Assembly: GCF_006345805.1 (NCBI RefSeq)
Contig: NC_043004.1
Coordinates: 101,618,001-101,682,000 of the forward strand
DNA length: 64,000 nucleotides
From: Octopus sinensis
Lineage: Eukaryota
Reading direction: 5' to 3'
Shown: piece by piece, positions 12,445 through 61,153 of the stretch
How positions within the stretch are numbered: the first letter of the stretch is position 1
Layout of the letters: each line of letters opens with the position of its first letter
The notes under the pieces: model-generated
Database searches by the model: none
What the model was told of the DNA's origin: nothing
The model's input: only the letters and a program-made list of their open reading frames with translations
Translations under genes and position numbers: made by a program

Positions 12445-15400
12445 GCATGCACGTGCACATGCTCACGCATATATTCAAATACTCTCTGCTCAGATCAAAT
12501 CTTCTCCCTCGTAAGCATATATCTATATAACTATTCTCTCTACAGGTTCAACTATCTTCATTATCATTAGTAAGCATATACCTGTTTACCTATTCTTCTT
12601 CCAGTTCGATTCATCTTCATTATCAGCATTGTATATCAGTGTTATCAGTGTTATCGATCTACATTTAACTACTGTTCTTTTAACAGGTCAATTGTTACCT
12701 AATGTCTTTGCAAGCCAGGCTTGGGGTATCCTGCACACATTACTTGAAATGTTCAGTTACCGACTGCATCACATTCAGCCCCATTATAGGGTGCAACTTC
12801 TAGGTCACCTTCACTCGCTGGCTTCTGTTCCACAAACCAATCAGAATCAGTTACATTTGTGGTGAGTAACCCTTTTTGACTCCCATTTCTTTTATTATAT
12901 CTTCTCCTCTTCTGCATTCTTATACTCTGCTTACTCCTCCTGACTCCTCCCTTTATTACGTAATCCTTTCTTTTCTCTTCCTTCTCCTTTACATCAGCAA
13001 GCACCTCTTCACTTCTCTCTCCTTCTCTTTATCCTCTTTCTTTTATTTTACCATTCTCTTTTTCTTTTCCCTTCTCTTCTTTTTCCTTTACTTTTCCTGT
13101 ACTCTTCCCTTTTTCCTCCTTTACCTTCTTTTTTTCCCCTCTTTTTAATTCATCAAACATGATCATCATTTTTACATTCATTTTTCCATAATTGCATAGG
13201 TCAGACAGAGTTTAACACTCACATATACACACACACACATACATACATACACTTGCATACTTGTACGTAAATACGTACCCATGACAAATTCTTTCAGTTT
13301 CTTTTTACGAAGTTCTCTTGCAAGGCTTTGTTAACCCAGGGCTGTTGTAGGAGTCACTTACCCAAGTTGCCACACAAAAGGTTTGAACCTGGAACCATGT
13401 AGTTGAGATACAAACTTGTTATCACACTGCTATACCTGTACAATAGTATCCAAATAGGTGATGCCCTGCTCCTCTAAACAGGAGATGTAATTCACTTTTC
13501 CCAAATCTATCTGTCTGATAGTAAATACATTCAACTTCCTTCTTTCCTCCCCAACAAAATTTCTAGCCTTTTACTATTGAGAGAGCAAATTGACAGAATC
13601 AGTGGAGCACCAAACAATGCTTTGTGGTATTTAGGTATGTCTCTTTACATTCTGCAATCAAATCCTGTCAGAATTGGCTCTGTCTTGCATCCTTCTGGGG
13701 CGATTAAGGAAGCACCAGTCAATATGGTGTCAGCTGTTCTCTTCCCACTAAATATTTGTGGTCCTGTGTCTACATGAAAAATCATTATTATAATTGATTC
13801 AATCAGTTATGACCTATGCCCCCTCTAATTTGTTGCTTTGTAAAAGTATATATTTCACTGTGTAACAAAATTAAATTTTTTTTGTCTTTGGTCAGTTGGT
13901 GTTATTTCCTATCTGCTTCATCATCATCATCATCGTTTAGCGTCCGCTTTCTATGCTAGCATGGGTTGGACGGTTCAACTGGTGTCTGGGAAGCCAGAAG
14001 GCTGCACCAGGCCCAGTCTGATCTGGCAGTGTTTCTACAGCTGGATGCCCTTCCTAACGCCAACCACTCCGTGAGGGTAGTGGGTGCTTTTTACGTGCCA
14101 CCTGCACAGGTGCCAGGTGAGGCTAGCAAACGACCACGATTGGATGGTGCTTTTTACGTGCCACCGGCGAGGCTTCTATCTACAAATCAAAGGAAATGAC
14201 TACTGTTCCCTTCAAACTTTGCTTTTATGACTTGGACATCAATGTTTTGAAACTGATCTATTTTCCATTACATTTCAATCAGATTCAGTCCTGAGTTGTT
14301 GAAGCAGAAATATCATTATAGCAAATACACTGCTCAGTACCACAAATTTGCTTGTCGGATGCCTGACTGTAACCACTTGTGTATGTTCCTTAGTGGCTGA
14401 CAATAAGTGCATCTCTGATCATGAGCAGGAGTAGTGGGGGAGCATCATAGCCATGTGTTGAGAGGCATTCGTTGGGGTTTGAGTAAATGTAACAAAAGTA
14501 AAGTTTGAAGGAAATATTAGTAGTTTTTCATACTTCCTAGAGGTAAGCAAATAGGAAATAACAATCACTACCCAAGGACAAAAATCATGTTATTAGTTAT
14601 TTGTACTAATGATTTGAAAATAATAAAATTTCTATTTTCTTTTCTTTCCACTGAAAACGAACCCTGAAATTGTTCAAGTTAGATCTAAAACCCAATTAAA
14701 AATTTTTAATATATTATTCTCCATAGCGTTGAAAGTACAGCTTTGCGACTTATCACTGGTTTGGGCAGTAATGAGATTCAGCCCCAGCTCACCAAGGTTT
14801 TCAAAGAACCCAAAGGACCAAATTTTCTGTCACTAGATTCTGAAGAACTGAATCGAGCTTTGGTCCTCACACTTGCAAGGGCTATGCATATCACAGGTTG
14901 GTAGAATATATTATTATTTGGACATTCACATCATCAATATATAATTATTATCATTTCGTTGCTAATAATGGTAATTATTAGCAAAAGCATCCTAAGTCCA
15001 AAATGTTGCCTTTTCAGAAAACGAAAAAATAGTTTCACCATTCCGTTTCTTTTTACATTTGCAAAACCATTGTACCGCACTTAGGCAATTTTCATATCTT
15101 GGCATCTGAAGCAGCTGGAGATACAATAGTTTGACCAAAAGAACCAGCAATTGCAAGCAAAAATAAATTTTGAGAAAAATGCATTTGGCCAAATTTGGAC
15201 ATACGACAGTTTAACATAATAGCAGTGATTTGTACATTTACATCATTTAAACTTGAGTTATTGGATATGCTATTCTGTGATATTCTTGCTTTTCATTCCA
15301 ACTTAAGGTATATCCTTTTGTTTCATTTCATAGCCAAAATGTGTGTGTGTGTGTATGTCTGTATGCTTGTATTTGTAACCATTTGTTCCATTCCATAAAA

Positions 15401-38483: not shown

Positions 38484-41400
38484 TACAACGGGCTTCTTTC
38501 AGTTTCCGTCTACCAAATCCACTCACAAGGCTTTGGTCGGCCCGAGACTATAGTAGAAGACACTTGCCCAAGGTGTCACGCAGTGGGACTGAACCCGGAA
38601 CCATGTGGTTGGTAAGCAAGCTACTTACCACACAGCCACTCCTGCGCCTATCTAATGCTAGGTGAAATAAACATCAGAGATGCTTTGATCCCTGCAGAAA
38701 ATGCTGGAGTCACTCAGATATTTTGCAAGCTCTTCTAAATCCAACAGTGGGTTTCCAGCATTGCAATAGATTTAGAAGTGCTTACAACACCGAGTAGCTC
38801 CTGCAGTTTCTGCATGGAACAAAGCAGCTCTGATGTTTATTTCATCTTTGATTATCTAATGTTATCATCATCATCATCCTTTAACGTCCATCTTCCATGA
38901 ATACATGGGTAGGACAGTTCATAGGAGCTGGCCAGGTAGAAAAACTACCCTGTGCTACTCTGTCTGATTGGGCAGAGATTTTACGGCCGGATGCCCTTCC
39001 TAACACCATTCATTCTGCAGAGTGCATTTAATCATCATCATCATCATCGTTTAACGTCCATTTTCCTTGCTAGCATGGGTTGGCCGGTTCGACCGGGGAT
39101 CTGGGAAGCCAGAAGGCTGCACCAGGCTCCAGTCTTATCTGGCAGTGTTTCTACAGCTGGATGCCCTTCCTAATGCCAACCACTCCGTGAGTGTAGTGGG
39201 TGCTTTTTACGTGCCACCTGCACAGGTGCCAGGCAAGGCTGGCAACGGCCACGGTCGGATTGGTGCATTTTACGTGCCACCGACACGGAAGCCAGTCGAG
39301 GTGGCACTGGCATCGGCCACGATTCGGATAGTGCTTTTACGTACCACCAGTCCAGGGGTCCTGGCATCTGCCAGGTGCCAGTCATAGGATTGGTTCAATT
39401 TCGATTCCGATTTCGATTTCACTTGCCCAACAGGTCTTCGCAAGCAAGGGCTTATGATTTTTTAAATAGCACTAGCACAGCTGAGGTTAGTTTTGACATA
39501 GCTGGATGCCCTTCCAAATGCCAACCACTTTACAGAGTGGACTGGATGCTTTTTACATGGCACCAGCACTATATGTATGTGTGTGTGTGCTCAATATTTT
39601 TCAGATGTTATCACTACCATTGTATTCAAGATAATTACTCTTTATATCAGTGGTTCCCAAACTTTTTATGGCTGCTACGCCCTTAGCTCCCAGGCTACAT
39701 TCCTAGCCCCCATCCCATCCTGGCCAAAATAGATCACTTTCTACTGCAAATGCAAAACAACTGTATTTCACTTATAAAACTTAACCTAATTTACCCATTA
39801 TTTTGGGTTTTTTACATGCATTACTCCCTTTTGGCCACACCAGTTTTTGCCCCACTTTGCTTCAATGCTCACTGGATGCTCCCACCGCCTGCAAGGGGGC
39901 AGTACCATCCAGTTTGAGAACCACTGCTTTATATTAATATTTTGAATTCAAGTATTTCTTATTTATTTGACCCTTTAGGTGCTCTCAAGGAGATACGTCC
40001 CCCAAATTGGTGTCTGACGGAAGATTACCAGAATTATCTCCTGAAGCCCTCAGATGATTTGACATGGATACCTGACCAAGAATATTACATTCGCCTTGTT
40101 GGACGTCTTGTTAATAGTATCCTTTCAGATCTTCAGTTAACAGAGAATAGTTGAACATGAGTTTTACAGCCTCTTAATTCTTTTGATACCAACCTACTTG
40201 TGTGAGATTGTCCCTAGTTCCATGATACCAACTCACTTGAGTAAGACTGACCCTGGCTCCTTGATACTAAGCCACCTGATAGTTCTGATCAAATGATACT
40301 GACCTGTCTGAGTGAGATTACACCAGATCCCAAATACCAACCCATCTCAATCAAACTATCTCTTGTTTCTTGGTATCAACCCAATTGTGTGAAACCCCTT
40401 CTGTCCCCATAATATCAGTTCATTTGAAACTACATGTTAGAGTGTTCATCTTCTAATTACATTTTTGATCAAACTTTTATTACTACATGAATAATGAATC
40501 ATTATGTAATATTTCATTCGGTAAGTTGTTTTTTGTGTTCTAAACACTGGCTTGACCGATCATTAAATGAGAAGGTTATAGTTATTTTGTTCAACTTCTG
40601 GGGTTGATCTAATCAACTGGCCCCCTCCACCAAAATTTCGGGCTTTCTGTCTAGAGTAAAAAAGAATAATAATTTTCATTTTATATTGGTAATACATGTA
40701 ACCTACATGCACCAGTCATTATGCACAGTTAATATGACTGTAAATCCTGTTGTCAATAGGTTAATCTTGCTTATCAGTTTGGTGAGCCTAATATATTTGA
40801 CTGCTGCAATGTTATTAGGATTGACTGGCTCATCTAATGCTTCAGTATTTAATTCATTTTAAAAGATATTGGTGTATCTCAGGCAACATGGTTGTGGTCT
40901 AGTACAAAGAGATAACAGGTTGATGTCACAGTAGGTTGGTGAGAGGGGGTGCTATGCTAAGAGAAGTAAAGCTGAGCTTGGAGGAGAGAATGAACAGGTA
41001 GAAGGAGTCAGGTGATACTTGGTGGGTTAGCAGTTTAATCAATGGGGAAACCAAAGGGTAAGAGTGTAAGATGGTAGAATTGAACAATGTTGTTGCCACT
41101 GCTGCTGCTGCTGTTGTTGCTGCTACCATTGTTGTTGGTGGTGGTCTTCTTGTGGTGTCTTGGTGTTTGTGTGTTACACACTTTCTCACACACTTCCTCT
41201 ATGAACCTGGGTCTGTATCTTCTACTGTACAGCATCCTGAGGCGCAATGGCCCTGTGGTTAGGGCAGCGAACTCGCGGTCATAGGATCGCGGTTTCGATT
41301 CCCAGACCGGGCGTTGTGAGTGTTTATTGAGCGAAAACACCTAAAAGCTCCACGAGTCTCCGGCAGGGGATGGTGGTGATCCCTGCTGTACTCTTTCACC

Positions 41401-44400
41401 ACAACTTTCTCTCACTCTTACTTCCTGTTTCTGTTGTACCTGTATTTCAAAGGGCCGGCCTTGTCAGTCTCTGTGTCACACTGAATATCCCTGAGAACTA
41501 CTTTAAGGGTGCACGTGTCTGTGGAGTGCTCAGCCACTTACACGTTAATTTCACGAGCAGGCTGTTCCATTGATTCGGATCAACCGGAACCCTCGTCGTC
41601 GTAACCGACGGAGTGCTTCCATCCACAGCATCCTGATGAAATCCGTCCTCACGTCATCTTTTACATCATCTTTGTCACATCTATTTATGCGGCTGTTGAG
41701 CTCATTAAGAGCTACGTTTATTTTTCAGCATCTGTGGGTATGCTGAATCCGAACGGAGGGAGATGTCTTTCTTCGCCTCTTTCTCGAAGAAGCGGATTGT
41801 GGCATGTCTCCATGTGAAGGATACGTTGAAGTCCAAGAGGTTCAGTGAGCCATTTGCAGCTGGGTGTTCAATTTCGAATTGGATGTTGTGGTGGAGGTTG
41901 TTAAAGACATTATGGATCCTGGAGTGATCTCAGGTGGCTGGTATCAAAAATGTTAATATGTTTTCAATAGGACATTAAATTTCACAGTTTATAAACACTC
42001 GGATATTCAGCATCTTTTATCATTTACCTTTTAGACCACAGCCATGCTGAGGCAAAGCCTTGAACGAGTTAGTTGAAACAATATATCCCAGTAGTATATC
42101 TATTTCTTTATTACCCACAAGGGGCTAAACACAGAGGGGACAAACAAGGACAGACATAGATATTAAGTCGATTACATCAACCCCAGTGTGTAACTGGTAC
42201 TTATTTAATCGACCCCGAAGGGATGAAAAGCAAAGTCGACCTTGGCGGAATTTGAACTCAGAACGTAGCGGCAGACGAAATACCGTCCAGCATTTCGCCC
42301 GGCGTGCAAACAGTTCTGCCAGCTCACCGCCAGTAGTATATCGTTTAATAGGACAGTGTATAGACACAGGGATGTTTATTATTAGACTGTGCCAACAAAT
42401 CGTATGTTGTTTGTTTCTTTCCTTAAGCTAGCATCAGCTATCTCTGATGTTTCTCCATCACCATTCCCTTGCTGTGACTGGCGCTTCAATGAATTCCCAA
42501 ACCCTGCTGCTCATGCTTTACATGTCACCTGCATTGAGATAATGGCATTACCAATTCCAAGTCAGATAGCAAGTGCTGCCCTCCTTGATGTTATTCTCAC
42601 CAGGTAATTTTTTCCTTCCTTCCATATTCACATATCATCACCATTTTAATGTGGCTCTTTTTTGTGCTTGCATGGGTCAGACAGAATTTATTAAAGCAGA
42701 TTGTCTACAGCCAGATACTTTTCCTGTCACCAACCCTTATCTGTTTCCCAGTGTACATTTGCATATGTATGTACATGCATACTATATACATACATATGTG
42801 AGGCGCAATGGCCCAATGGTTAGGGCAGTGGACTCGCGGTCATAGGATCGTGGTTTCGATTCCCAGACCGGGCGTTGTGAGTGTTTATTGAGAGGAAACA
42901 CCTAAAGCTCCATGAGGCTCCAGCAGGGGATGGTGGTGATCCCTGCTGTACTCTTTCACCACAACTTTCTCTCACTCTTACTTCCTGTTTCTGTTGTACC
43001 TGTATTTCAAAGGGCCGGCCTTGTCACTCTCTGTGTCACGCTGAATCTCCCCGAGAACTACGTTAAGGGTACACGTGTCTGTGGAGTGCTCAGCCACTTA
43101 CACGTTAATTTCACGAGCAGGCTGTTCCGTTGATTCGGATCAACCGGAAACCTCGTCGTCGTAACCGACAGAGTGCTTCCATCCCATATAGGAGACTATT
43201 GGAAAATACAGGGTGGACCAAAATGATCCGACACATTTGGAGGCTTAATAAAAGCACAAAATAAGAAATCATGAAAAGAAAAATTTTATTTTCTGAATGT
43301 ACATATAATGCCATTTTATTTCATTAAGTTTTAAAAATTAAATCAGCTAAATGCTTCCCATCATTGTCAACACACTGTTGGAGACGTTCATGAAAGTTAT
43401 CGATAACTCTTTGGATCATTTCTTCTGGAATGGTTGCTATTTCTACACAAATTGCCCGTTTTAATTCATCAATAGATCGAAGGCGATGACTGAATACTTT
43501 TGATTTTAAATATCCCCACAAGAAGAAATCACATTTCACCATTCCAGAAGAAATGATCCACAGAGTTATCGATAACTTTAATGAACATCTCCAACAGTGT
43601 GTTGACAATGATGGGAAGCATTTAGCTGATTTAATTTTTAAAACTTAATGAAGTAAAATGGCATTATAGGTAGATTCAGAAAACAAAATTTTTATTTTCA
43701 TTATTTCTTATTTTGTGCTTTTATTAAGTCCCCAAATGTGTCAGATCATTTTGGTCCACCCTCATCATCATCATCGTTTAACGTCCGTTCTCCATGCTAG
43801 CATGGGTTGGACGGTTCGACCGGGGATCTGGGAAGCCAGAAGGCTGCACCAGGCTCCAGTCTTATCTGGCAATGTTTCTACAGCTGGATGCCCTTCCTAA
43901 CGCCAACCACTCCGTGAGTGTAGTGGGTGTATATATTAATCAAGAGTTGTGAATTTAGAAGCATGAAAGATGAAGTTTGTTTTCAAGGAATGTCTGTCAC
44001 TGTAATGTCTTTTAATGTTTCCTGTTTCAGCTGCACCAGAGTTCCAAGAGAAAAAGTAATGAGTTGGATGAATGCTGTTGCCCTCATACTCACCTCGTTA
44101 CCGGTAAGAAATGAAGTTGTAGAGACTTCTTTTTTTCCTGTTTTTTTGCAAGTTTTACCACTAATACCACCACCACCATCATCATCATGACCTACTGTTA
44201 TTCTTATCATCTGCCTGTTTCACTCAATTTTGTTTTAATTATGTTTATAATAATGATGATGTTTAACATGTTAAGTACCTAGGTATTTAACAATACTAAT
44301 TTTTGATATAAGCTCTAGATGATAAATTCGGTGGATGAGTGTCTAGTGCTCTACCAATTCTGTCAGTATTGATAATAATGAAGGTAATAATGATATCAAT

Positions 44401-46594
44401 AACTATAGTAGTAGTAGTAGTAGTAGTAGTAGTAATAGTAGTAGTAGTAATGATTTCAAATTTTGGCCCAAGGCCAGCAATTTTGGGGGAAGGGCTAAGT
44501 TGATTAAATTGACCCCCAACTGCTACTTATTTTATCAATCCCGAAAGGCTGAAAGGTAAATTTGACCCTGCATCCAGCTGTAGAAACTCTGCCAAATCAA
44601 GATTGGACCCTGGTGCAGCCATCTGGTTCGCCAGCCCTCAGTCAAAATCGTCCAACCCATGCTAGCATGGAAAGTGGATGTTAAACGATGATGATGATGA
44701 TGATGAATAATGATATTAATAATAAAGGTTTCAAATTTTGGCATGAAGCCAACAGTTTTGTGTAGAGGATGGTTAGTCAATTACATCAGCCCACAGTACT
44801 TGATTACTCTCTTACTCTTTTAGTTGTTTCAGTCATTTGACTGTGGCCATGCTGGAGCACCGCCTTTAATCGAGCAACTCGACCCCGGGACTTATTCTTT
44901 GTAAGCCCAGTACTTATTCTATCGGTCTCTTTTTGCCGAACTGCTAAGTGACGGGGACGTAAACACACCAGCATCAGTTGTCAAGCAATGCTAGGGGGAC
45001 AAACACAGACACACAAACATATACACACACATTTATATATATATACATATATACGACAGGCTTCTTTCAGTTTCCGTCTACCAAATTCACTCACAAGGCA
45101 TTGGTCGGCCCGGGGCTATAGCAGAAGACACTTGCCCAAGATGCCACGTAGTGGGACTGAACCCGGAACCATGTGGTTGGTTAGCAAGCTACTTACCACA
45201 CATCCACTCCTGCGCCTATACATTATTTTTCCACTGCGAAGGGATGAAAGACAAAGTGGGATTTGAACTCAATGTGAAACTAAAAGAAATGCTGCTAATC
45301 ATTTTGACTGACAATTCTGCCACCTCACCACCTTAATAATGATAATTAATCCTTTCTGCAATAAGCACAAAACCTGAAATTTTGAAAGAGAGAGCAAATC
45401 GATTAAATCAAACCTAGTACTTGACTGGTACTTTATTTTATCAATCCCGAAAGGATGAAAGGCAAAAATCAACTTTTATAGCATCTGAACTCTGAATGTA
45501 AAGCTGGAAGAAATGGCACTGAGCATTTTGTCTGACATGCTGCTGCTGCTGCTGGTGGTGGTGTAGTAGTAGTAGTAGTAGTAGTACCCGGCAGTGGCTC
45601 TCTGGCTTCTGATCTTAACTGATTGGAAGTGTTATCACGTACATTGTTTTGTCTTAGTATAAAAGATGGGCTACAGCAAATATTCTGCTCAGTACCACAG
45701 ATTTGCTTGTCAGTTGTTTGACCGTAACCAGTTGAGCATGTCCCTTAGTGGCTGATATGTCCATCTCTGATCACAAGCAGAAGAAGTGGGGGAGCATCAT
45801 AGTCAAGTGTTGAAGGAACTGTTTGGGATTTGAATAATTCACCTCTGGAAACATGGGTGTTGGTTCAATCTCCTTAAATAACCCTTATTCAAGAACCTTT
45901 GAATGTGATAGGCTACTTGACCCCAAGAAAATTCTAACTGGGCCCCACCTTCAAGGTCATGCGCTGTTTATATTGATATGAGATCACCATGTTGCTCACA
46001 TATGGTTGTGATGGGTATACTGGGCTTCGTATATTTTACCCCAGTGTCACTTTGATGGCCTGCACTGCTCTCTCACTCAATAATAATAATAATAATAATA
46101 TTAATAATAATAACAACAATAATAATAATAATAATCTTCATTTTACTTTGTTTCAGGAACATTACTTCTCTGTTCTCAATGACAAGATAGTGGAACAGAT
46201 GTGCAGCCCACTGCTGTCCAGTTCAAACAGTCGATGCGACCCATTCCAGTTGTTCAACTTCAAGGCCAGCCATCAGGTGTATGCAGAGCAGTACTGCAGC
46301 TATTTGCTGTCTCTGGTGCATGCCTGCTGGCACCATGCCTGTATCGGTCAGCTCAGTCAGATCCCTGCGTGAGTACGAGGAAATGTTTTCATGCTCGTCT
46401 TTGGAATACACACACGTGCATGGAATCATTCACACACACTCCATTTCTCTCTCTCTCTCTCTCTCCCCCCTCCCTCCCTCCTCCGAGGTATAACATCTCG
46501 TACTGTTCACATTTCCCATCACACAAACATGCATATGTCTTTCTTCCATGGTACCTATACACACGCACACATACCTTTCTCCTAAGGCACACAC

Positions 46595-47104: not shown

Positions 47105-49548
47105 CCGGAGTAAACACATAAATGTGAAACAAGGTGGAAAAAAGAGTACTCAAATACCAGTGGTAGAGTAATATACTTTATTTAAAGCAGCAGAAAATTC
47201 CACAAAACCTGACACTCTGAGTTTCGCGTTGCTGTTCGTCGGACAGTTTTTGCTAGAAAAAACTGTCCGACGAACGGCAATGCGAAACTCAGAGTGACGG
47301 GTTTTGTGGAATTTTCTGCTGCTTTAAATAAAGTATATATATGTATATATTGTTTTCTTGGGAACTTGTTCCAGTAATAAATTATTTGTATACTAACAGT
47401 GTTGTTTCATTGTTATACACTGTTGTTAATTCTCATACCATACTCTTTATCTTTTGCCACACCCCTTTTTTTTTTTCTATCTCCTCTCATTACTCTCCTT
47501 TCTGTCTTCCATTCCATGTCTTTCCTCTTCCCTCTTCTCCTGATCTCCGCCACCTTCTCCAATACTGTAGTCTCTGAGTCCAGCCCAAACCATTACCTAA
47601 TCATTAATTTGGTCACCAGAATTACCAATCTAAGCATTGTCTTCAAATTCTACAGGTTTGTTCGTGATAAACTGAAGCCCATCATTCGGACTGAAGAGCA
47701 GTTTATCTTCTTATGTCACCTCATTGGACCATTTCTACAGAGGTTCCATGCTGAAAGAACTCGCTGCCTTATTGAAGTAAGATTATTATTTTTTTTTTTT
47801 TCACTTAGGGACGAAATATAGGAGGAAATATTAATGTTTCTTGACTTCTTTATTATTTTTGATGTGTTTTTATTTAGGGGGCAAAGACTGAGCAGAGACA
47901 GTGAATTATTACACAACTATTCAAGACAGTTTGAAGGGGAAACTATTTCACATATATTTGGGACATTTCAGGGAGGGGATACTGATTCACAGGTATTGGA
48001 AGATGGGGCCTATTTTAAGACATTGTAGACAAAGCATAGAGGGTAACTATTTCATGGGGGATTATTTTGTGGTGTTCATTCTTTCCAGTTTATGGTCCTT
48101 ATTTTTAATATTTTGAGGATGGTTGGGGTTTTTCAGTAGATATCTGCCTTCAGGGTGTTTTTATGTGGTCTATTAACCCTTTCGTTACCAACCCGGCTGA
48201 AACCGGCTCTGGCTCTGTAGTACAAATGCCTTGTTTTCATAAGTTTTGAATTAAAATCTTTGACCAAACCTTAGTCCCAACTTATGTTCCTAACACTAAC
48301 TTAATGATAACTAAATTATTTTACTAAATTTTTTGTTATATTTAAAATAATTGGAAGAAACACAGAGCATTTCAAAATAAATACGATAACGAAAGGGTTA
48401 ACCTGCTAGACTGAAATGCCATATTTGGAGGAAGATAACTCACTTATATCAATTCTAGTGCTCGACTAGTTATTTTCCCTGCCAACTCAGGAGGTATGAA
48501 AAACAATAAAAATACTTCTCTTCATCCCACTCCCATTTAAACATTCAATACAACTCACTTTATCCTTTTAATCGGAAGTGCAGACTTCAAAAAAGATTAC
48601 TAGCAAAATACCTTTCTTTCATATTGCTATTGTACGCAAGTTGTCTTGAAGAGATTTGGCAGCTCTTGCTCAGCAAACTGAACAGTTATTCAAGGCATGT
48701 CATCTTGATTAATAGATAGATTAAAGAGGAGGAGGAGGAGGGGGATTGTTGTGCTGTTAATTTGGTTTCCATGTTTATCATCATCATCATCGTTTAACGT
48801 CCGTTTTCCGCGCTAGCATGGGTTGGACGGTTCGACCGGGGTCTGGGAAGCCAGGGCCTGCACCAGGCTCCAGTCTGATCTGGCAGAGTTTCTAAAGCTG
48901 GATGCCCTTCCTAATGCCAACCACTCCGCGAGTGTAGTGGGTGCTTTTTACGTGCCACCTGCACAGGTGCCAGAGGGGTCCGGCATCGGCCGCGATCGGT
49001 TGGAGCTTTTAACGTGCCACCGGCACGGAAGCCAGCCAAGGCGGCGCTGGCAACGGCCACGTTCGGATGGTGCTTTTTATGTGCCCACTGGCACAGAAGC
49101 CAGTCGGGGCGGCGCTGGCATCGGCCATTTTTGTGGTCAATTTTTCGTTGGAGCAGTTATTTTTGCTCTAATTGATTGTGAAGTAAGAGTAGAAACTAAC
49201 TTTCTGTTTTCACTTTTCTGTCAGTCAAATGATTAAACAAATTGAAGTTCACAGCATTAAATAAGTTTGTGTTGGGAAGAGAGGGTAATGCTGTTACATG
49301 CAGGGACTTCCATTGAAGAGTAAAAGAGCTAAGATTAATAACAGACTGTTTTTTCTTTTACTTGTTTCTGTCATTTGACTGCGGCCATGCTGGAGCACCG
49401 CCTTTAGTCGAGAAAATCGAGCCAGAACTTATTCTTTGTAATCCTAGTACTTATTCTATCGGTCTATTTTGTCGAACCACTAAGTTACGGGGACATAAAC
49501 ACACCAGGTTGTCAAGCGATGCTGGGGGGGACAAACACAGACATGCAA

Positions 49549-51123: not shown

Positions 51124-51156
<33 letters not shown>

Positions 51157-54100
51157 CATGTATGTATGTATGTGAGATATTAAAACATGTGTAGCATCTA
51201 AATATTTTTCTCTTTTACAGTTGACCGTTGAATTGTATGAAATCCTGGAAAACGTCGACAAGGTATCAGAACATATGCATTTGATGGATGCTATTTCAGA
51301 CTTCCTGTATCCTTTGAGATTGTTTGTTAATCATAGCTGGGAATTTGCTTGTTTTGCATATCTGTCTACATGTTTATGTGTGTGCAAGTGCGTGTGTGTG
51401 TGTGCACAAGTATGTTGGTTCATGTTTATATGTGTTTGTGTTGTATGAATGTGTATGTGTATGAATGTTCATATGTGAGATTTTGTGGATAAATATTTTC
51501 GTGTCTGAGCTGTTGCATAATTTTGTGTGGTTGCTTTGAGATGGGTATACACACCACTGCTCACATGCTCTGTAGAATCATTAAAATCAACATACAGAAC
51601 CTTATCATCATAATCATCATCATCATCATCGTTTAACGTCCGTTTTCCGCGCTAGCATGGGTTGGACGGTTCAACTGGGGTCTGGGAAGCCAGAAGGATG
51701 CACCAGGCCCAGTCAGATTTGGCAGTGTTTCTACGGCTGGATGCCCTTCCTAACGCCAACCACTCCGTGAGTGTAGTGGGTGCTTTTTACGTACCACCTG
51801 CACAGGTGCCAGGTGGGGTTTGGCATCGGCCACGATTGGTTGGTGCTTTTAACGTGCCACCGGCACGGAAGCCAGTCGAGGCGGCACTGGCATCGGCCAC
51901 GTTCGGATGGTGCTTTTTATGTGCCACCGGCACAGAAGCCAGTTGAGGTGGCGCTGGCATCGTGTGGAAGAAAATTTGATAAAGACATACATTTTCCAAT
52001 TAGTGATGATCTAACCAGATGAAATACGTAACAAAACTGTAAGCCTTGCTATGGATAGCTATCAATCGCAGAAGTGGATTAGCCAGTGTTGTTGATTTTC
52101 ATTTCTAAACTGTTTATTTGCCAACTGGCTGACTTCATCATACAGACACACATTGGGTTAGGTTTGTGTGTGTATAATACTCATACATCTACCTTAATAT
52201 GTAGATTATCAACAGGTGGGGGAGATGCCTTTGTTTTTCACTTTGAATTTGTCTTTTCCTGCTTCCCAATAGTCTCAGATGTTTAGACATTAGGGTTAAA
52301 ACATTATTGACCAAATATGGATTCAAAGAAGTTTCAGCTGAGTGATCTGACCATCCCTTTCTTCTTCTTCTTCTTTTTCTTTTTCTTCTTCTTCTTTTCT
52401 TCTTCTTCCTTTTCTTTTTCTTCTTCTTCTTCTTTTTCTTCTTTTTCTTTTTCTTCTTCTTTTTCTCTTCTTCTTCTTCTTTTTCTTTTTCTTCTTCCTC
52501 TTCTTTTTCTTTTTCTTTTTCTTCTTCTTCCTCTTCTTCTTCTTCTTCTATCTTCTTCTTCTTCCAACAACACACATGCTTGTGCACTCAAACACACACA
52601 CCAATGTTGATAACTTGGCAGATCTCTTAGATTATTGGATAGAATGCCTCGTGGTGTTTGTTCCAGCGCTTTGCACTCTGAGTTCAAATTCTACTAGGGT
52701 CAACCTTGCCTTTCATCCTTTTGAGATTGATAAAAAAAGAAAGTTCCAAACCTGGAATGGTGGATTTGCAGAACTGTTAGAACGTGGTTAGGGTGTTGGA
52801 CTCATGATTCCTGGACTGGATGATGTTTTATCATCATCATCATTTATTGTCTATTGTCAATAAATGAGCCAGCGCCGACTCGACTGGCTTCTGTGTCGGT
52901 GGCACATAAAAAGCACCATCCGAACGTTGCCTGCGCCGCCTTGGCTGGCTTCCATGCCACTAGCATGTTAAAAGCTCCAACCGATCGTGGCCGATGCCGG
53001 ACCCCCCCCCTGGCACCTGTGCAGGTGGCACGTAAAAAGCACCCACTACACTCGCGGAGTGGTTGGCGTTAGGAAGGGCATCCAGCTGTAGAAACTCTGC
53101 CAGATCAGACTGGAGCCCGGAGCAGCCCCTGGCTTCCCAGACCCCGGTCGAACCGTCCAACCCATACTAGCATGGAAAACGGACGTTAAACGATGATGAT
53201 GATGATGATGATGATGTCCATGCTGGCATGAGATGGATGGTTTGACCTGAGCTGGCAAGCTGGAGAGTTGCACCAGGCTCCAGTCTAATTTAGCATAGTT
53301 TCTGCAGCTGGATGCCCTTCATAAAACCAACCACTTTACAGAATGTGGTGGGTGCTTTTATGTGGCACCGGCATGATGGATAGTATAGAGATAATCCATC
53401 ACGATGGATAGTATAGAGATAATCCATCACCCAGTTTAACACCATCACCTGGCTCCTTGGTTACTTTCAATGTTGTAAGCATTTGGTATAGGTCTCCCAT
53501 TTAAGGATCTCTTCCTCTCTCCCTCGTACAAATCTCAGAGGCCTTGTGAAAAATCATAGACCACTGCCTTAACTAGAAATAACAGAAATGAAACAAAATG
53601 ATAGGGTGGTCAAGTTTGGAATGTCTTTGCTCATAGATCTACTCAGTTAGGGCCAACTCCAAACTCAACAACAAAAACTCACATATTGAACATCTCAAAA
53701 TTGTTTTTTGTCACATTTTAATTTTTTTATTTTTGTGTTTGTCAATAGATCTCCTTAAACCTATATTGTCTATCTCAGTGGTTCTCAACCAGAGTTCACA
53801 TAACCCTTAAGGGTCCATATAAGATTTTGTTGTTAAAATGTACATGCAATACACAAAATATTTTAATTCTTTTTTTATACAATTCCTAATAATGCTTAAC
53901 CCTTTAGCATTCAGATTATTCTATCAAATGTTGAGACCCCCTTCAGTCATGATTGACCGTGGGATTGCACCTAGAAAGTTACCCTCCCAGGCACAAGTCT
54001 GGGCAAGGTTGTTTATGGAAGACCAGCAGTCGCCCATGCATATTGGCCTCCCCTCTCCATGCTACCAGTGTTATCCAAGGGAAAGGCAAAGGGGCCGATA

Positions 54101-54870
54101 CAGCTTGGCACCTGTGACGTTGCAACTCATTTCTACAGCTGAGAGAACTGGAGCTACGTGAAATAAAGTGTCTTGCTCAAGGACACAACACGCAGCCCGG
54201 TCTGGGATTCAAACTCACAACTTTATGATCATAAGCTCGACGCTCTAACCACTGAGTCATGCGCCTATCAAATGTAATGCTTATTTATTCACATCATTTG
54301 GAATTAATCGGGTATTATCTTGTAGCCTTAAGATTTCAATTATGCGACTCTATATTTTTTAGACCAACATTGTAGGGTAGGTGTGAAAGGCTGGATCTGG
54401 CCAGTTTGAACGTAAAACAAGAAGAACATGTTGGCCGGATGTGGCCAGTTTAAATGCTAAAGGGTTAATATAAAAAATATAATAGGATATTTTTAAACAT
54501 TGAATGACTATTCGTGTTCATCCAAGTAAAATAGGAATCAAAAGGATTCATAGACAAGGAATGGTTGAGAACCCCTGGTCTGGCTCCTGGTTGGTCTTAA
54601 TGCCAACCCCCAACCCAACCTCCAATAATGTCACTACCACTTCCTTAACGTTGCTTCAGCTATCACATAAAATACATGTTTGTCGGCGATGGAGTGAAAA
54701 ACGATGTGGAGAAGATCATTAGGAACCTACGTCCACCTCTGCAGCTACGCCTCAGGTTCATCTCCCGCATCAACATCGAGGAGACTGCTACTTCGAATTC
54801 TTCTGCCCCCACCTCTGCCTCCTCTTCTACCTCTCAGCCAACAAAGATTCAGGACAGTTTTCACTTTTAA
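351..54870 (+). CDS. MED23: MED23 (Mediator subunit 23), 5'-partial spliced gene, 24 coding exons in window
   Basis: Joined exons give 3006 nt and 1001 aa, colinear with recalled vertebrate MED23 motifs ([16 protein letters not shown], [72 protein letters not shown], YHxKYMF..LRLRFI). Intron phases 0,2,1,2,1,2,1,1,2,2,0,0,0,0,0,1,1,1,2,0,2,0,2 are consistent. Confidence 0.97.
1688..2010 (-). mobile_element. Tc1/mariner-superfamily transposase 3' end plus TIR
   Basis: Minus strand PNCNPMD*YAWSMV, frameshift, then [14 protein letters not shown]...[18 protein letters not shown]; ends in TA-CAGGGTG. Confidence 0.7.
2558..2760 (+). CDS. MED23: MED23 exon w2
   Basis: tttctag|CTT...GA|gtaagc; [15 protein letters not shown]...PHALKDHLE. 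Confidence 0.95.
2926..3438. mobile_element. Tc1/pogo-type MITE
   Basis: About 25-bp imperfect TIRs CCGTAAATCTTCGAGGATAATCC / GGACTATACTCGAGGATTTACGG; TA on the left flank. Confidence 0.7.
3811..4070 (-). mobile_element. SINE-like family A ((ATG)n tail; core GGAAGGGCATCCAGCTGTAGAAA)
   Basis: More than 20 copies, e.g. 4938-5151+, 5514-5876+, 6529-6690-, 8720-9114+, 9145-9338+, 10349-10614+, 11895-12071-, 13919-14170-, 18625-18962+, 19868-20120+, 39032-39445-, 43763-43929-, 48778-49128-, 51611-51963-, 52866-53216+, 60268-60545-. Confidence 0.85.
4548..4621 (+). CDS. MED23: MED23 exon w3
   Basis: cttacag|A...T|gtaagt; [24 protein letters not shown]. Confidence 0.95.
6800..7012. mobile_element. 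TTAA-flanked MITE (CCCTTTAG family)
   Basis: TTAA|CCCTTTAG...CTAAAGGG|TTAA; relatives at 37222-37442, 37447-37667 and 53900-54464. Confidence 0.8.
7254..7486 (+). mobile_element. SINE family C (possible Meta-domain core GTCGACTTTGCCTTTCATCCTTTCGGGGTCGATAAATTAAGTACC)
   Basis: 13-bp TSD AGAAACATAGATA; copies 568-797-, 16723-16950-, 20540-20775-, 35719-35945+, 35940-36080-, 42101-42331-, 56426-56652+ (TSD TATAGAAGAG). The Meta-domain assignment is from memory. Confidence 0.8.
7599..7767 (+). CDS. MED23: MED23 exon w4
   Basis: ttcacag|AT...AG|gtgagg; [12 protein letters not shown]...[12 protein letters not shown]. Confidence 0.95.
7975..8215 (-). mobile_element. CR1-clade LINE 3' end fragment
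   Basis: [18 protein letters not shown]...[17 protein letters not shown]...[11 protein letters not shown] resembles the end of invertebrate CR1 ORF2. Confidence 0.7.
9357..9658 (+). mobile_element. tRNA-headed SINE family E (CORE-like centre)
   Basis: GGCTCAGTGGTTAGAG head; GTGTTGTG..GAGCAxGACACTTTATTTCAC..CATCTGTAAAAATGAG core; copies 18232-18550- and 53932-54264-. Confidence 0.75.
10716..10858 (+). CDS. MED23: MED23 exon w5
   Basis: tttgcag|C...A|gtgagt; [47 protein letters not shown]. Confidence 0.96.
12091..12296. repeat. inverted repeat, 68-bp arms, 57-bp spacer
   Basis: 12098-12165 vs 12223-12290, one G.U-type mismatch. Confidence 0.93.
12687..12861 (+). CDS. MED23: MED23 exon w6
   Basis: ttaacag|GT...TG|gtgagt; [59 protein letters not shown]. 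Confidence 0.96.
14727..14896 (+). CDS. MED23: MED23 exon w7 (not in ORF track)
   Basis: tccatag|C...G|gttggt; [21 protein letters not shown]...[20 protein letters not shown]. Confidence 0.95.
15445..16530 (+). mobile_element. internally deleted piggyBac-type transposon
   Basis: TTAA TSDs (15441-44, 16531-34); TIR CCCTTTCGTT/AACGAAAGGG; ORF 15724-16161 with acidic N-terminus and [26 protein letters not shown], continuing after a frameshift as [11 protein letters not shown]. Confidence 0.85.
17060..17257 (+). CDS. MED23: MED23 exon w8
   Basis: attgcag|GT...A|gtaggt; [34 protein letters not shown]...VDTEYKKWR. Confidence 0.94.
17584..17919 (+). repeat. perfect 100-bp tandem repeat (3.4 copies) inside a family A element
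   Basis: CTGACCTCGC recurs at 17631, 17731 and 17831 with identical intervening sequence. Confidence 0.95.
19403..19469 (+). CDS. MED23: MED23 exon w9
   Basis: tctctag|GT...TG|gtaagt; [23 protein letters not shown]. Confidence 0.94.
19732..19868. repeat. (TCTA)n plus (TA)n compound microsatellite
   Basis: direct reading. Confidence 0.95.
20392..20445 (+). CDS. MED23: MED23 exon w10
   Basis: atttcag|C...AA|gtaaga; [18 protein letters not shown]. Confidence 0.9.
21499..21877 (+). mobile_element. tRNA-headed SINE family B (GGCGCAGGAGTGGCTGTGTGGTAAGTAGC...)
   Basis: A/B-box-like head (GTGTGGTAAG, GGTTCAGTCCC), internal TA/CA tract, tail GAAACAAGTAAAAGAG; copies 24762-25336+, 28996-29394+, 34280-34685-, 34722-35100+, 36291-36685-, 38235-38650-, 44811-45218-, 49352-49761-. 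Confidence 0.85.
22109..22485. mobile_element. Helentron/HINE-like non-autonomous element
   Basis: Starts AACAAGCACTCAGAGAGCAC; internal (ACAA)n; ends in the stem-loop CCTCTGCCTT-CGCT-AAGGCGGTGG then TAATAA. Confidence 0.45.
23235..23343 (+). CDS. MED23: MED23 exon w11
   Basis: tacttag|A...AAG|gtgagt; [36 protein letters not shown]. Confidence 0.95.
25465..25536 (+). CDS. MED23: MED23 exon w12
   Basis: tttgcag|TAT...TTG|gtaagt; [24 protein letters not shown]. Confidence 0.95.
25590..25860. repeat. compound (CA)n/(TA)n microsatellite block
   Basis: direct reading. Confidence 0.95.
26896..27314. mobile_element. unclassified MITE with 27-bp TIRs
   Basis: ATCTTTTCGGTTTGAACGGCAGTTTTT and its exact reverse complement at 27288-27314; internal ttagggttag-like motif. 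Confidence 0.7.
27634..27744 (+). CDS. MED23: MED23 exon w13
   Basis: attgcag|GCA...ATG|gtgagt; [37 protein letters not shown]. Confidence 0.95.
28244..29425. mobile_element. hAT MITE split by two SINE insertions
   Basis: CAGTGGTTCTCAAC...GTTGAGAACCACTG, TSD cactagga/tattagga; SINEs at 28480-28866 and 28996-29394. Confidence 0.7.
29537..29927. mobile_element. Helitron/Helentron-like non-autonomous element
   Basis: Starts TACTAGCAG..GCCGCCGTTGCTCGGG and ends CACACAACCTCACTTTTATAAAGAT, an architecture recalled for rolling-circle non-autonomous elements. Confidence 0.45.
30296..30355 (+). CDS. MED23: MED23 exon w14
   Basis: tcttcag|AAC...CGG|gtatgt; [20 protein letters not shown]. Confidence 0.93.
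31170..32728. repeat. tandem array of about 2.6 copies of a ~570-bp element separated by (AAT)n
   Basis: Units about 31170-31490, 31500-32075 and 32090-32728; further copies 45587-46135 and partial 14320-14485. Confidence 0.8.
32752..32859 (+). CDS. MED23: MED23 exon w15
   Basis: tttatag|AAA...CCA|gtaagt; [36 protein letters not shown]. Confidence 0.95.
36922..37021 (+). CDS. MED23: MED23 exon w16
   Basis: actgtag|GTT...G|gtatag; [33 protein letters not shown]. Confidence 0.94.
37222..37667. mobile_element. two CCCTTTAG MITEs in inverted tandem sharing a central TTAA
   Basis: Copy 1 at 37222-37442, TTAA at 37443-46, copy 2 inverted at 37447-37667, then TTAA. Confidence 0.75.
37929..38027 (+). 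CDS. MED23: MED23 exon w17
   Basis: ctttcag|AT...G|gtaaag; [33 protein letters not shown]. Confidence 0.94.
39648..39926. mobile_element. hAT (Charlie-like) MITE
   Basis: CAGTGGTTCCCAAAC...GTTTGAGAACCACTG with perfect 8-bp TSD CTTTATAT; ends 52 bp before exon w18. Confidence 0.88.
39979..40116 (+). CDS. MED23: MED23 exon w18
   Basis: cctttag|GT...A|gtatcctttc (U12-type donor); [17 protein letters not shown]...[17 protein letters not shown]. Confidence 0.93.
40117..42437 (+). other. U12-type (minor spliceosome) GT-AG intron of MED23
   Basis: Donor GTATCCTTTC; branch-like TTTCCTTAAG at 42418-42427, 11-12 nt before the AG; no long polypyrimidine tract between branch and acceptor. Confidence 0.88.
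41241..41624 (+). mobile_element. tRNA-headed SINE family D (GGCGCAATGGCCCAGTGGTTAGGGCAGCGG...)
   Basis: 12-bp TSD ACAGCATCCTGA; copies 33499-33894+, 42801-43184+, 28480-28866- (TSD CAAACCTATATG), partial 27975-28175-. Confidence 0.88.
42438..42603 (+). CDS. MED23: MED23 exon w19
   Basis: tttccttaagctagcatcag|CT...AG|gtaatt; [39 protein letters not shown]...LLDVILT. This acceptor gives a length matching the recalled human DTMAGKSPGPFPNCDWR. Confidence 0.92.
43209..43762. mobile_element. foldback non-autonomous Tc1-like element made of two right ends
   Basis: Arms 43209-43434 and 43538-43762 are inverted, about 94% identical by hand count; TA-CAGGGTGG terminus; minus strand encodes [14 protein letters not shown]...[12 protein letters not shown]. 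Confidence 0.88.
44031..44103 (+). CDS. MED23: MED23 exon w20
   Basis: gtttcag|C...CCG|gtaaga; [25 protein letters not shown]. Confidence 0.94.
46157..46368 (+). CDS. MED23: MED23 exon w21
   Basis: gtttcag|GAA...GC|gtgagt; [18 protein letters not shown]...[18 protein letters not shown]. Confidence 0.95.
47171..47338. repeat. near-perfect palindrome, 81-bp arms, 6-nt loop
   Basis: 47171-47251 vs 47258-47338, four differences. Confidence 0.95.
47656..47776 (+). CDS. MED23: MED23 exon w22
   Basis: tctacag|G...GAA|gtaaga; [41 protein letters not shown]. Confidence 0.95.
48177..48397. mobile_element. piggyBac-type MITE
   Basis: TTAA|CCCTTTCGTTA...TAACGAAAGGG|TTAA; same terminus as 15445-16530. 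Confidence 0.85.
51221..51306 (+). CDS. MED23: MED23 exon w23
   Basis: tttacag|TTG...CT|gtatcctttg (U12-type donor); [29 protein letters not shown]. Confidence 0.93.
52358..52563. repeat. degenerate (CTT)n/(CTTTTT)n polypyrimidine tract
   Basis: direct reading; source of the spurious poly-E/K/F/S ORFs. Confidence 0.95.
53776..54577. mobile_element. hAT MITE containing a TTAA MITE containing a SINE
   Basis: CAGTGGTTCTCAACC...GGTTGAGAACCCCTG, TSD gtctatct/gtctggct; MITE 53900-54464 with TTAA; SINE 53932-54264 with TSD CTATCAAATGT. Confidence 0.85.
54660..54870 (+). CDS. MED23: MED23 exon w24 (last coding exon)
   Basis: cttccttaacgttgcttcag|C; [37 protein letters not shown], then a Ser/Thr-rich tail and TAA at 54868-54870. 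Confidence 0.93.
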
Positions 54871-55011
54871 ACTGTTTACTTCTCAGCTGGCTTGACCTGT
54901 TCATATATACACACACACACCGGATTAGGTGTGTGTATGTATGAAACACATTTATGTGTATATAAATATACATTTATGTGTATATAAATATACTATATAT
55001 ATATATATATT

Positions 55012-55017
55012 AATAAA
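55012..55017 (+). terminator. candidate polyadenylation signal
   Basis: AATAAA about 140 nt after the stop, but inside a TA-rich tract and could be chance. Confidence 0.25.
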
Positions 55018-55106
55018 TATAAGGGTAGCAAGAAATTCTACAAAAAATTCTCCGCTACCAGCGGTCCAGCGAGAAAGAAAAGATAGTCAAAGACTATATA
55101 ATATAC

Positions 55107-59881: not shown

Positions 59882-61153
59882 TGCCATCATTGTTGTCATC
59901 ATCATCATGGATTTATTTTAGTTACTATCCATTTGTTTCTCTATTTCATGTCATCCATTTTTTTGTTTTTTGGTGGGGGAGGATGTCTGTGAAGGAAAAA
60001 TGTTTATTATGATGGTAATAACAAGTACATAATAATAATAATAATAATTCTCAAAAATATAAATCTTTGTTTTTCTTTTTTAATTGATAGCTTTTGTGTT
60101 ATTTTCAGTTGTTCATCCTTTGATGTGTGTTAACTGATAAATAACAAAACAGTGATGATGTTATATTTGCAGAAATGTCAAAAAAAAATATTGCAGGTGA
60201 GAGCAGTCGAACATCACAACCCAAGAAATATACATCGAATAAATGAAGCTAACCACCACCACTCACAACATCATCATCATCATCATCATTTAACGTCCGC
60301 TTTCCATGCTGGCATGGGTTGGACGGTTCAACTGGGGTCTGGGAAGTCAGAAGGCTGCACCAGGCCCAGTCTGATTTGGCAGTGTTTCTACAGCTTGATG
60401 CCCTTCCTAACACCAACCACTCTGTGAGTGTAGTGGGTGCTTTTTACGTGCCACCGGCACAGGTGCCAGACAAAACTGCCAATGACCACGGTCGGATGGT
60501 GCTTTTTATGTGCCACCGGCACTGGTATCAGATTTGCCACTGGCACTAACAAATATAACCATTCATACTATAACCACCAATAATCCTACATATACTACCT
60601 GATAAAATACAGAGTGGGTATGGTTAGAATGCCTTTGCTGGTTCTCCTTAGAGGAATTTTGATAAATTCTTTGAATAGAAACCTATTTTAGTGCTTTCAG
60701 CAATGACAACAGAGGAAAGTTGCTCCTCACTTGCTGCTCAAAATGCACCATAAATGCTTGATTATATAATGGAAGGCAAGGTTTACGATATTGGAAGAAT
60801 ATCGTCGTCTTCCATCATCTTTTTGTTCAGGCTTCCGGCAGGCAAAGAGAGAAGACTTCGAGTACGAATGCTATTTACACCTGGTTTTATTTACAAGTTT
60901 CACAGGAAAGGTGAAGTGTGCTGCTCTCAGCAACCGTCTTTAGCTGTGTGCGTTGTGCAGTAGCTCCGATAGTGCGGATGCAAGTAGCCTCTGGAGGTAC
61001 ACATGCAGACAGGCCCAGCCAGTGGTGTGTTCAGCAAGTGCTGCTGTGAAGTGGCGCCAAAAGAGACAGATCTGAATTGGGTTTTCCATCGCGAGCCTCG
61101 TGATCTTGTGCATGGCAAATGGATGCAGGTGAGGTCTCGCTCCAGTCTAGTCT

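What the first reader, a model, noticed from the sequence alone, without database searches (positions are those of the whole stretch)
51307..54659. The terminal intron of MED23 is a second U12 intron
It has a perfect donor (GTATCCTTTG) and branch site (TTCCTTAAC), splitting the conserved DFL|YHIKYMF motif. Having two minor introns makes this Mediator subunit doubly dependent on U11/U12 activity. Retention would replace the conserved C-terminus with [13 protein letters not shown]... (stop at 51448) with no downstream exon junction. A cryptic U2-like donor AG|GTATCA lies at 51263, 44 nt upstream, and its use would shift the frame.
Basis: partly seen in the sequence, partly recalled or inferred. 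Interest (0 to 1): 0.72.

Follow-up and report, generated by a model that had tools for sequence, protein, structure and literature searches.

The report
Second minor (U12) intron in octopus MED23
The last coding intron of the octopus MED23 gene is a genuine minor-spliceosome (U12-type) intron that dates back at least to the common ancestor of protostomes and deuterostomes and is missing in the two vertebrates examined, which makes it a correct but fairly ordinary finding.

Summary
The window is Octopus sinensis MED23, codons 369-1369, with 24 exons and 23 GT-AG introns. The last intron (51307-54659, phase 2) starts with GTATCCTTTG. It carries TTCCTTAAC with the branch A 11 nt before the 3' AG. 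It scores -1.9 bits as a U2 donor. Joining 51306 to 54660 reproduces the annotated protein exactly and restores DFL|YHIKYMF. A first U12 intron lies at 40117-42437 (phase 1) and is the orthologue of the known mouse Med23 minor intron.

I mapped 273 MED23 introns in nine animals. Only these two positions carry U12 signals. The terminal U12 intron is present at the same codon and phase in sea hare, brachiopod, nemertean, tick, brittle star and amphioxus. It is absent in pangolin and shad. There the exon reads through the site, and a U2-type intron lies 46 nt downstream.

The retention stop (51446-51448) and the frame-shifting GT at 51263 are real. That GT is a weak donor, and better cryptic donors lie inside the intron. 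"Double dependence" on U11/U12 and escape from NMD are inferences, not shown. No RNA reads were available. This is a new member of a known kind, probably already in bulk catalogues, and of low to moderate interest.

The parts
51221..51306 (+). Penultimate coding exon of MED23 (86 nt, LTVELYE...DAISDF + CT of the Leu codon)
   Evidence: Exact protein-to-genome mapping of P0001
51307..54659 (+). Terminal coding intron, 3353 nt, phase 2, GT-AG subtype of the U12 (minor) class
   Evidence: Unique GT-AG junction reproducing P0001. U12 signals at both ends. Orthologous U12 introns in six other phyla
51307..51315 (+). U12-type 5' splice site GTATCCTTT (9/9 to RTATCCTTT); preceding exon bases are CCT, so there is no AG at -2/-1
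   Evidence: Scores -1.9 bits on a U2 donor matrix
54641..54649 (+). U12 branch-point sequence TTCCTTAAC (9/9 to TTCCTTRAY); branch A at 54648, 11 nt before the last intron base
   Evidence: It is the only copy in the window on either strand
54658..54659 (+). 3' splice site AG
54660..54870 (+). Last coding exon (C of the Leu codon, then [13 protein letters not shown]...DSFHF, then the stop codon at 54868-54870)
   Evidence: Aligns to human MED23 residues 1272-1353 with E 3e-21
51446..51448 (+). In-frame TGA reached if the intron is retained (46 novel residues after DFL)
51263..51264 (+). Weak donor, 2.3 bits
40117..42437 (+). The other U12 intron of the gene (phase 1, GTATCCTTTC ... TTCCTTAAG 11 nt before AG), orthologous to the AT-AC minor intron of vertebrate MED23
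   Evidence: Mouse Med23 phase-1 minor intron described in PMC12956336
51606..53216 (.). Two inverted copies of a roughly 350-nt interspersed SINE-like repeat inside the intron (51606-51968 and 52868-53216), with a (TTC)n microsatellite at 52359-52564 between them

Best explanation
The segment 51307-54659 is a genuine U12-type (minor-class, GT-AG subtype) intron and is the last coding intron of Octopus sinensis MED23.

Inferred mechanism, from established knowledge of the minor spliceosome:
- The U11/U12 di-snRNP recognises the GTATCCTTT donor (through U11, later U6atac) and the TTCCTTAAC branch site (through U12) together.
- The branch A at 54648 attacks the donor.
- The nearby AG at 54659 is chosen mainly by its short distance from the branch, not by a long polypyrimidine tract.
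- Exons 51221-51306 and 54660-54870 are joined to encode the conserved C-terminal ...DFL/YHIKYMF...LRLRFI... segment of the Mediator tail subunit.

The gene therefore needs the minor spliceosome twice, for this intron and for 40117-42437.

The intron is ancient. It was present in the last common ancestor of protostomes and deuterostomes. On the line to vertebrates it was removed, and a U2-type intron now lies 46 nt downstream.

Shown here: the signals, the junction, the orthology and the conservation. Inferred: actual U11/U12-dependent excision, and any regulatory use of slow minor splicing.
For: - Motifs: donor 9/9 and branch site 9/9 to the U12 consensus, with the branch A 11 nt from the 3' end.
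- Not a U2 site: the donor scores -1.9 bits on a U2 donor matrix built from 198 U2 donors of MED23 orthologues. Real donors have a median of 8.3 and a 5th percentile of 4.2.
- Junction: 51306/54660 is the only GT-AG solution that reproduces the annotated protein exactly. It restores a sequence that is contiguous, with no intron, in vertebrate genomic DNA.
- Specificity: of 273 mapped MED23 introns in 9 species, 14 match at least 8/9 at the donor. All 14 lie at the two orthologous positions, and all have a branch-site match of at least 7/9 placed 10-15 nt from the 3' splice site.
- Conservation: the same position and phase, with U12 signals, occur in Aplysia, Lingula, Tubulanus, Ornithodoros, Amphiura and Branchiostoma.
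- Organism: O. sinensis was one of the species compared in a pan-eukaryotic minor-intron survey, which describes molluscs as relatively enriched in minor introns (PMC10639083).
- Exon end: an AG at -2/-1 of the exon is reported to block minor splicing (PMC11347168). Here the exon ends in CT.
Against: - No transcript or junction reads could be consulted. Use of the junction rests on the annotated protein model and on conservation.
- No U11, U12, U4atac or U6atac gene lies in the window (Rfam scan empty), so the machinery was not verified in this genome here.
- The last 20 nt of the intron are 76% pyrimidine, so the absence of a polypyrimidine tract is not clear-cut.
Confidence: 0.93

Rival explanations
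1. The intron carries U12-like motifs but is in practice removed by the major (U2) spliceosome, that is, an intron in the course of minor-to-major conversion.
For: It has GT-AG termini, and the 3' end is fairly pyrimidine-rich at 76%. Minor-to-major conversion is a documented route of minor-intron loss (PMC10639083).
Against: - The donor scores -1.9 bits as a U2 site, below every real U2 donor in the set, whose minimum is 1.6.
- The exon does not end in AG.
- Both U12 motifs are perfect.
- The motifs have been held for the whole of bilaterian history in seven lineages. That conservation would not be expected if U1/U2 did the work.
Confidence: 0.04
2. The motifs are a coincidence or the gene model is wrong: the real junction is elsewhere and no U12 intron exists here.
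For: Motif counts in the window are not in themselves significant. No RNA evidence was available.
Against: - The motifs sit exactly at boundaries defined independently by the protein.
- The spliced product matches human MED23 across the junction.
- The same architecture recurs in six independent genomes.
Confidence: 0.01
3. Beyond being a U12 intron, it acts as a regulated switch. Slow or regulated minor splicing of the last intron yields a retained-intron mRNA that escapes EJC-dependent NMD. This mRNA encodes a MED23 lacking its conserved last 69 residues.
For: - The retention ORF ends at 51446-51448 with no exon junction downstream.
- Mouse Med23 shows increased minor-intron retention when U11 is removed (PMC12956336 and PMC13192996).
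- The intron has been conserved as U12 for a long time.
Against: - Nothing here shows retention or regulation.
- The retained transcript would carry a 3' UTR of roughly 3.4 kb or more and could be degraded by EJC-independent NMD or nuclear surveillance (my inference).
- The two vertebrates examined lack the intron altogether.
- A large survey argues that neutral processes explain much of minor-intron evolution (PMC10639083).
Confidence: 0.1

Closest known systems
U12-type (minor-class) spliceosomal introns, GT-AG subtype
   Same: The donor is /GTATCCTTT. The branch site is TTCCTTAAC, 11 nt from the 3' AG. The exon does not end in AG. The intron is in a non-zero phase. It sits in a long, intron-rich gene otherwise made of U2 introns. 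Its type is conserved at the orthologous position across phyla.
   Different: Nothing differs structurally. Excision by U11/U12 was not demonstrated here.
The known minor intron of mammalian MED23 / mouse Med23 (phase 1; retained after U11 loss: PMC12956336, PMC13192996)
   Same: It is in the same gene and of the same intron class. The mammalian intron is orthologous to the octopus intron at 40117-42437, after GRLVD.
   Different: It is not the intron of this finding. The terminal U12 intron at DFL|YH is absent from pangolin and shad, where the exon reads through the site. The nearest intron there is a U2-type phase-0 intron 46 nt downstream. The vertebrate phase-1 intron is AT-AC, whereas the octopus one is GT-AG.
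Genes with more than one minor intron
   Same: MED23 of octopus and six other invertebrates carries two U12 introns in one transcript.
   Different: In human such genes are a small minority, with 722 minor introns in 699 genes (PMC7507305). The vertebrate MED23 genes examined here (pangolin, shad) carry only one, and mouse Med23 is described with a phase-1 minor intron. From my own knowledge, the classic multi-U12 families are ion channels and kinases, not Mediator subunits.

Membership tests
U12-type (minor) intron | 5' splice site matching /[AG]TATCCTT(T) | tested here: met
   GTATCCTTT at 51307-51315, 9/9
U12-type (minor) intron | Branch-point sequence TCCTTRAY close to the 3' splice site (typically about 10-15 nt) | tested here: met
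   TTCCTTAAC at 54641-54649, with the branch A 11 nt from the last intron base
U12-type (minor) intron | Poor fit to the U2-type donor consensus and no AG at exon positions -2/-1 | tested here: met
   The donor scores -1.9 bits on a U2 donor matrix, against a minimum of 1.6 for real donors. The exon ends in CCT. The rule about AG comes from PMC11347168.
U12-type (minor) intron | No extended polypyrimidine tract between branch site and 3' splice site | tested here: inconclusive
   Only 10 nt (GTTGCTTCAG) separate the branch site from the AG. However, positions -20 to -3 are 76% pyrimidine, largely because of the branch site itself.
U12-type (minor) intron | Same class at the orthologous position in other species | tested here: met
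   U12 signals occur at the same codon and phase in Aplysia, Lingula, Tubulanus, Ornithodoros, Amphiura and Branchiostoma. The intron is absent, not converted in place, in Manis and Alosa.
U12-type (minor) intron | Organism has a working minor spliceosome (U11, U12, U4atac, U6atac) | not tested
   No snRNA gene lies in the window. The literature only says that O. sinensis was among the species compared in a minor-intron survey and that molluscs are minor-intron enriched (PMC10639083).
U12-type (minor) intron | Excision depends on U11/U12 in vivo; the junction is seen in RNA | not testable with these tools
   No RNA-seq or perturbation data were available. The junction is inferred from the exact protein match.
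MED23 (Mediator tail subunit, Pfam PF11573) | Full-length homology to MED23 | tested here: met
   The window encodes residues 369-1369 of P0001 exactly. P0001 carries PF11573. The C-terminus matches human MED23 chains 6h02_A and 7emf_W at E 3e-21.

The most novel reading that the evidence does not exclude
The terminal U12 intron is an ancient bilaterian regulatory device. Rate-limiting minor splicing of the very last intron, with no exon junction downstream, would let cells tune the ratio of full-length MED23 to a C-terminally truncated form. Vertebrates would have replaced this control when they lost the U12 intron and acquired a U2 intron 46 nt away. The inverted SINE-like pair inside the octopus intron could further modulate splicing or serve as an ADAR substrate.
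Probability: 0.07. Interest if true: 0.6.

Novelty: new member of a known kind. Interest (0 to 1): 0.27.

Why it matters
In mouse, Med23 is one of the transcripts used to report minor-spliceosome failure, where its minor intron is retained after U11 loss. This work shows that the ancestral bilaterian MED23 carried two U12 introns. Octopus, sea hare, brachiopod, nemertean, tick, brittle star and amphioxus still carry both.

This has three modest consequences:
- The vertebrates examined are the derived state. They lack the last U12 intron and have a U2 intron 46 nt downstream.
- Human-centred orthology tables cannot see this intron, because they start from human introns.
- MED23 is a clean small test case for minor-intron loss with a nearby major-intron gain, and for GT-AG/AT-AC subtype switching.

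It does not change what is known about how U12 introns work.

Tried and rejected
- **Failed padded searches.** Two attempts at a length-padded homologue search failed on the region coordinates. Putting the real sequence first solved it.
- **Failed look-ups.** Four gene look-ups found nothing on record: Haliotis, Mya, Camelus and Onychostoma. I used other species instead.
- **Exhausted caps.** Lamprey, tunicates, cnidarians and insects could not be examined. No cnidarian appeared in the best 120 hits.
- **Motif counts.** Counts alone do not establish significance. The argument rests on position and orthology.
- **ATATCCTTT at 15310.** It lies deep in intron 7 with no exon in front of it, so I rejected it as chance.
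- **Intron sliding.** I rejected this as the explanation for the vertebrate difference. The 46 nt between the two intron positions encode the conserved YHMKYMFTGDSVKEQ in all species, so the boundaries cannot simply have moved.
- **Searches that found nothing.** The Rfam scan of the window gave no hit. A Pfam scan of three ORFs downstream of the gene gave no hit. A phage-collection search with the intronic repeat gave no match and was a poor choice of collection.
- **Literature.** Searches found no paper describing a second MED23 minor intron.

Full report
**What the window is.** The two exons flanking the reported intron translate to a 98-residue C-terminus. It matches human MED23 in solved Mediator structures (6h02_A, 7emf_W; E 3e-21, residues 1272-1353). 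It is 100% identical to the annotated MED23 of Octopus sinensis (P0001, 1369 aa, PF11573). Exact-match mapping of P0001 onto the + strand covers residues 369-1369 without a mismatch. For each of the 23 gaps there is exactly one GT-AG solution that reproduces the protein. The window therefore holds 24 coding exons and 23 introns of MED23. The coding region ends with a stop codon at 54868-54870.

**The observation.**
- Intron 23 runs from 51307 to 54659 (3353 nt, phase 2).
- It begins with GTATCCTTTG.
- TTCCTTAAC lies at 54641-54649, followed by GTTGCTTCAG and then the exon.
- The branch A at 54648 is 11 nt from the last intron base.
- The spliced product reads ...DAISDFL|[13 protein letters not shown]...
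- Read-through gives ...[16 protein letters not shown]..., 46 new residues ending at the TGA at 51446-51448.
- The GT at 51263 (aag|GTATCA) is there, and using it removes 44 nt and shifts the frame.

**Is it more than chance?** Motif counts alone are not convincing. GTATCCTTT occurs twice in the window on both strands against 0.52 expected, and 10 of 100 shuffles reach two copies. TTCCTTAAC occurs once against 0.76 expected. What matters is position. Both GTATCCTTT copies start at the first base of an intron whose boundary was fixed independently by the protein. The only TTCCTTAAC sits at the correct distance from the 3' splice site of the same intron. From the per-position frequencies I estimate a joint chance of about 1e-8.

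**Comparison within the gene.**
- The other 21 introns have ordinary GTAAGT- or GTGAGT-like donors and pyrimidine-rich 3' ends.
- I built a U2 donor matrix from 198 non-U12 donors of MED23 orthologues. The 51307 donor scores -1.9 bits on it.
- Real donors score a minimum of 1.6, a 5th percentile of 4.2 and a median of 8.3.
- The exon ends in CCT, not AG. An AG at -2/-1 is reported to prevent minor splicing (PMC11347168).
- Intron 18 (40117-42437, phase 1) has GTATCCTTTC and TTCCTTAAG 11 nt before its AG.

**Orthologues.** I fetched the MED23 gene with its introns for eight other animals and mapped each annotated protein exactly onto its locus.

| Species | Group | Locus |
|---|---|---|
| Aplysia | gastropod | L001 |
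| Lingula | brachiopod | L002 |
| Tubulanus | nemertean | L003 |
| Ornithodoros | tick | L004 |
| Manis | pangolin | L005 |
| Alosa | shad | L006 |
| Amphiura | brittle star | L007 |
| Branchiostoma | amphioxus | L008 |

Of 273 mapped introns, 14 match RTATCCTTT at 8/9 or better. All 14 lie at just two alignment positions. All have a branch-site match of at least 7/9 placed 10-15 nt from the 3' splice site. No other intron exceeds 7/9 at the donor.

The terminal position (inside the Leu codon of DFL/YH, phase 2) is U12-type GT-AG in octopus and in all six other invertebrates:

| Species | Donor | Branch-site match |
|---|---|---|
| Aplysia | GTATCCTTT | TTCCTTGAC |
| Lingula | GTATCCTTT | TTCCTTGAC |
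| Tubulanus | GTATCCTTT | ATTCTTAAC |
| Ornithodoros | GTATCCTTT | TTCCTTGAC |
| Amphiura | GTATCCTTA | AACCTTAAC |
| Branchiostoma | GTATCCTTT | ATCCTTAAC |

The set includes an echinoderm and a cephalochordate as well as lophotrochozoans and an arthropod. The intron was therefore already a U12 intron in the protostome-deuterostome ancestor.

**Vertebrates differ.**
- In pangolin and shad the genomic DNA encodes ...DPICDFLYHMKYMFTGDSVKEQ without interruption (tblastn).
- The next intron is a phase-0 U2-type intron between KEQ and VEK, 46 nt downstream. Its donor is GTAAGT in Manis and GCAAGG in Alosa.
- None of the seven invertebrates has an intron at KEQ|VEK.
- The 46 nt between the two positions encode conserved residues in every species, so this cannot be boundary sliding.
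- The parsimonious reading is loss of the U12 intron plus gain of a nearby U2 intron on the vertebrate stem. Lamprey and tunicates were not examined.

**The other U12 intron.**
- The phase-1 intron after GRLVD is present in all nine species.
- It is AT-AC in pangolin (ATATCCTTTT at L005 44149) and in shad (L006 36989).
- It is also AT-AC in Lingula, Amphiura and amphioxus.
- It is GT-AG in octopus, Aplysia, Tubulanus and the tick.
- This is the phase-1 minor intron reported for mouse Med23, whose retention rises when U11 is deleted (PMC12956336; PMC13192996).

**How it most likely works.** The mechanism below is inferred from what is established for the minor spliceosome.
- U11/U12 binds the donor and the branch site cooperatively.
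- U6atac replaces U11 at the donor.
- The branch A at 54648 attacks, and the AG 11 nt downstream is selected by proximity.
- Both U12 introns must be removed to make full-length MED23. In octopus the transcript therefore depends on the minor spliceosome at two points, against one in the two vertebrates examined.

That dependence, and any regulatory use of it, is inferred and not shown.

- A stop in a retained last intron indeed has no exon junction downstream.
- The resulting 3' UTR would be roughly 3.4 kb or more. EJC-independent decay or nuclear retention could still remove such transcripts. This is my inference from general knowledge.
- The cryptic donor at 51263 scores 2.3 bits and is a poor candidate. 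If U2-type cryptic splicing occurs, the GTs at 51410 (caa|GTATGT, 8.2 bits) and 51388 (caa|GTGCGT, 6.2 bits) are more likely.

**Comparison with what is known.**
- The intron meets every sequence criterion of the U12 class that could be tested here.
- Two criteria were not testable: excision by U11/U12 in vivo, and the presence of the snRNA genes in this genome. The window has no Rfam hit.
- O. sinensis was among the species compared in a pan-eukaryotic minor-intron survey, which describes molluscs as relatively minor-intron rich (PMC10639083). This intron is therefore very probably already in bulk catalogues.
- No paper in the searchable library describes a second MED23 minor intron.
- Human-anchored orthology analyses (PMC11347168) cannot see it if human lacks it, as the two vertebrates examined here do.
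- Genes with more than one minor intron are a small minority in human, with 722 introns in 699 genes (PMC7507305).

**Verdict.** It is a new, or at least not individually described, member of a well-known kind. The added value is evolutionary. There are two ancestral U12 introns in bilaterian MED23. The terminal one is missing in the two vertebrates examined, which carry a nearby U2 intron instead. The other U12 intron has switched between GT-AG and AT-AC. Interest is low to moderate.

Noticed in passing
L005 49481-51211 and L006 49364-51054, compared with window 51221-54870: Pangolin and shad lack the DFL|YH U12 intron. They carry a U2-type phase-0 intron 46 nt downstream (KEQ|VEK) that none of the seven invertebrates has. 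This points to loss plus nearby gain on the vertebrate line, not sliding.
   Followed up: partly
window 40117-42437; L002 19171-20541; L007 43355-45603; L008 30361-30956; L005 44149; L006 36989: The conserved phase-1 U12 intron after GRLVD switches subtype. It is GT-AG in octopus, Aplysia, Tubulanus and the tick. It is AT-AC in Lingula, brittle star, amphioxus, pangolin and shad.
   Followed up: yes
L005 around 44038-45249 and L006 37000-37425: The deposited pangolin and shad gene models mis-handle the AT-AC intron. They substitute invented GT-AG introns, which drops or alters residues around GRLVDTMAGKSPGPF. This is the usual annotation artefact at AT-AC introns.
   Followed up: partly
window, at least 20 places, e.g. 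3811-4068, 5558-5875, 39029-39348, 48777-49123, 51600-51970, 52868-53216, 60270-60522: A roughly 350-nt interspersed SINE-like repeat occurs in both orientations throughout the MED23 introns and downstream of the gene. Copies are 72-92% identical. The GC-rich patches in the terminal intron are copies of it.
   Followed up: partly
window 51606-51968 and 52868-53216: Two copies of that repeat lie inverted inside the terminal U12 intron. The arms are up to 110 nt long and 93-94% complementary, about 0.9-1.4 kb apart. In the pre-mRNA they could form a long duplex, which might be a substrate for RNA editing or influence splicing. This was not tested.
   Followed up: no
window 52359-52564, 51779-51962, 51124-51171, 54948-55021: The terminal intron contains a (TTC)69 microsatellite and a 67-nt tandem repeat of 2.8 copies. 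TA-rich simple repeats lie just upstream of the penultimate exon and just after the stop codon.
   Followed up: no
window 15308-15318: GTATATCCTTTT, which contains ATATCCTTT, lies deep in intron 7 with no exon in front of it. I judged it a chance match.
   Followed up: yes
   Followed up: yes
window 55012-55017: AATAAA lies about 145 nt after the stop codon in an AT-rich stretch. It may be the polyadenylation signal, but this is unverified.
   Followed up: no
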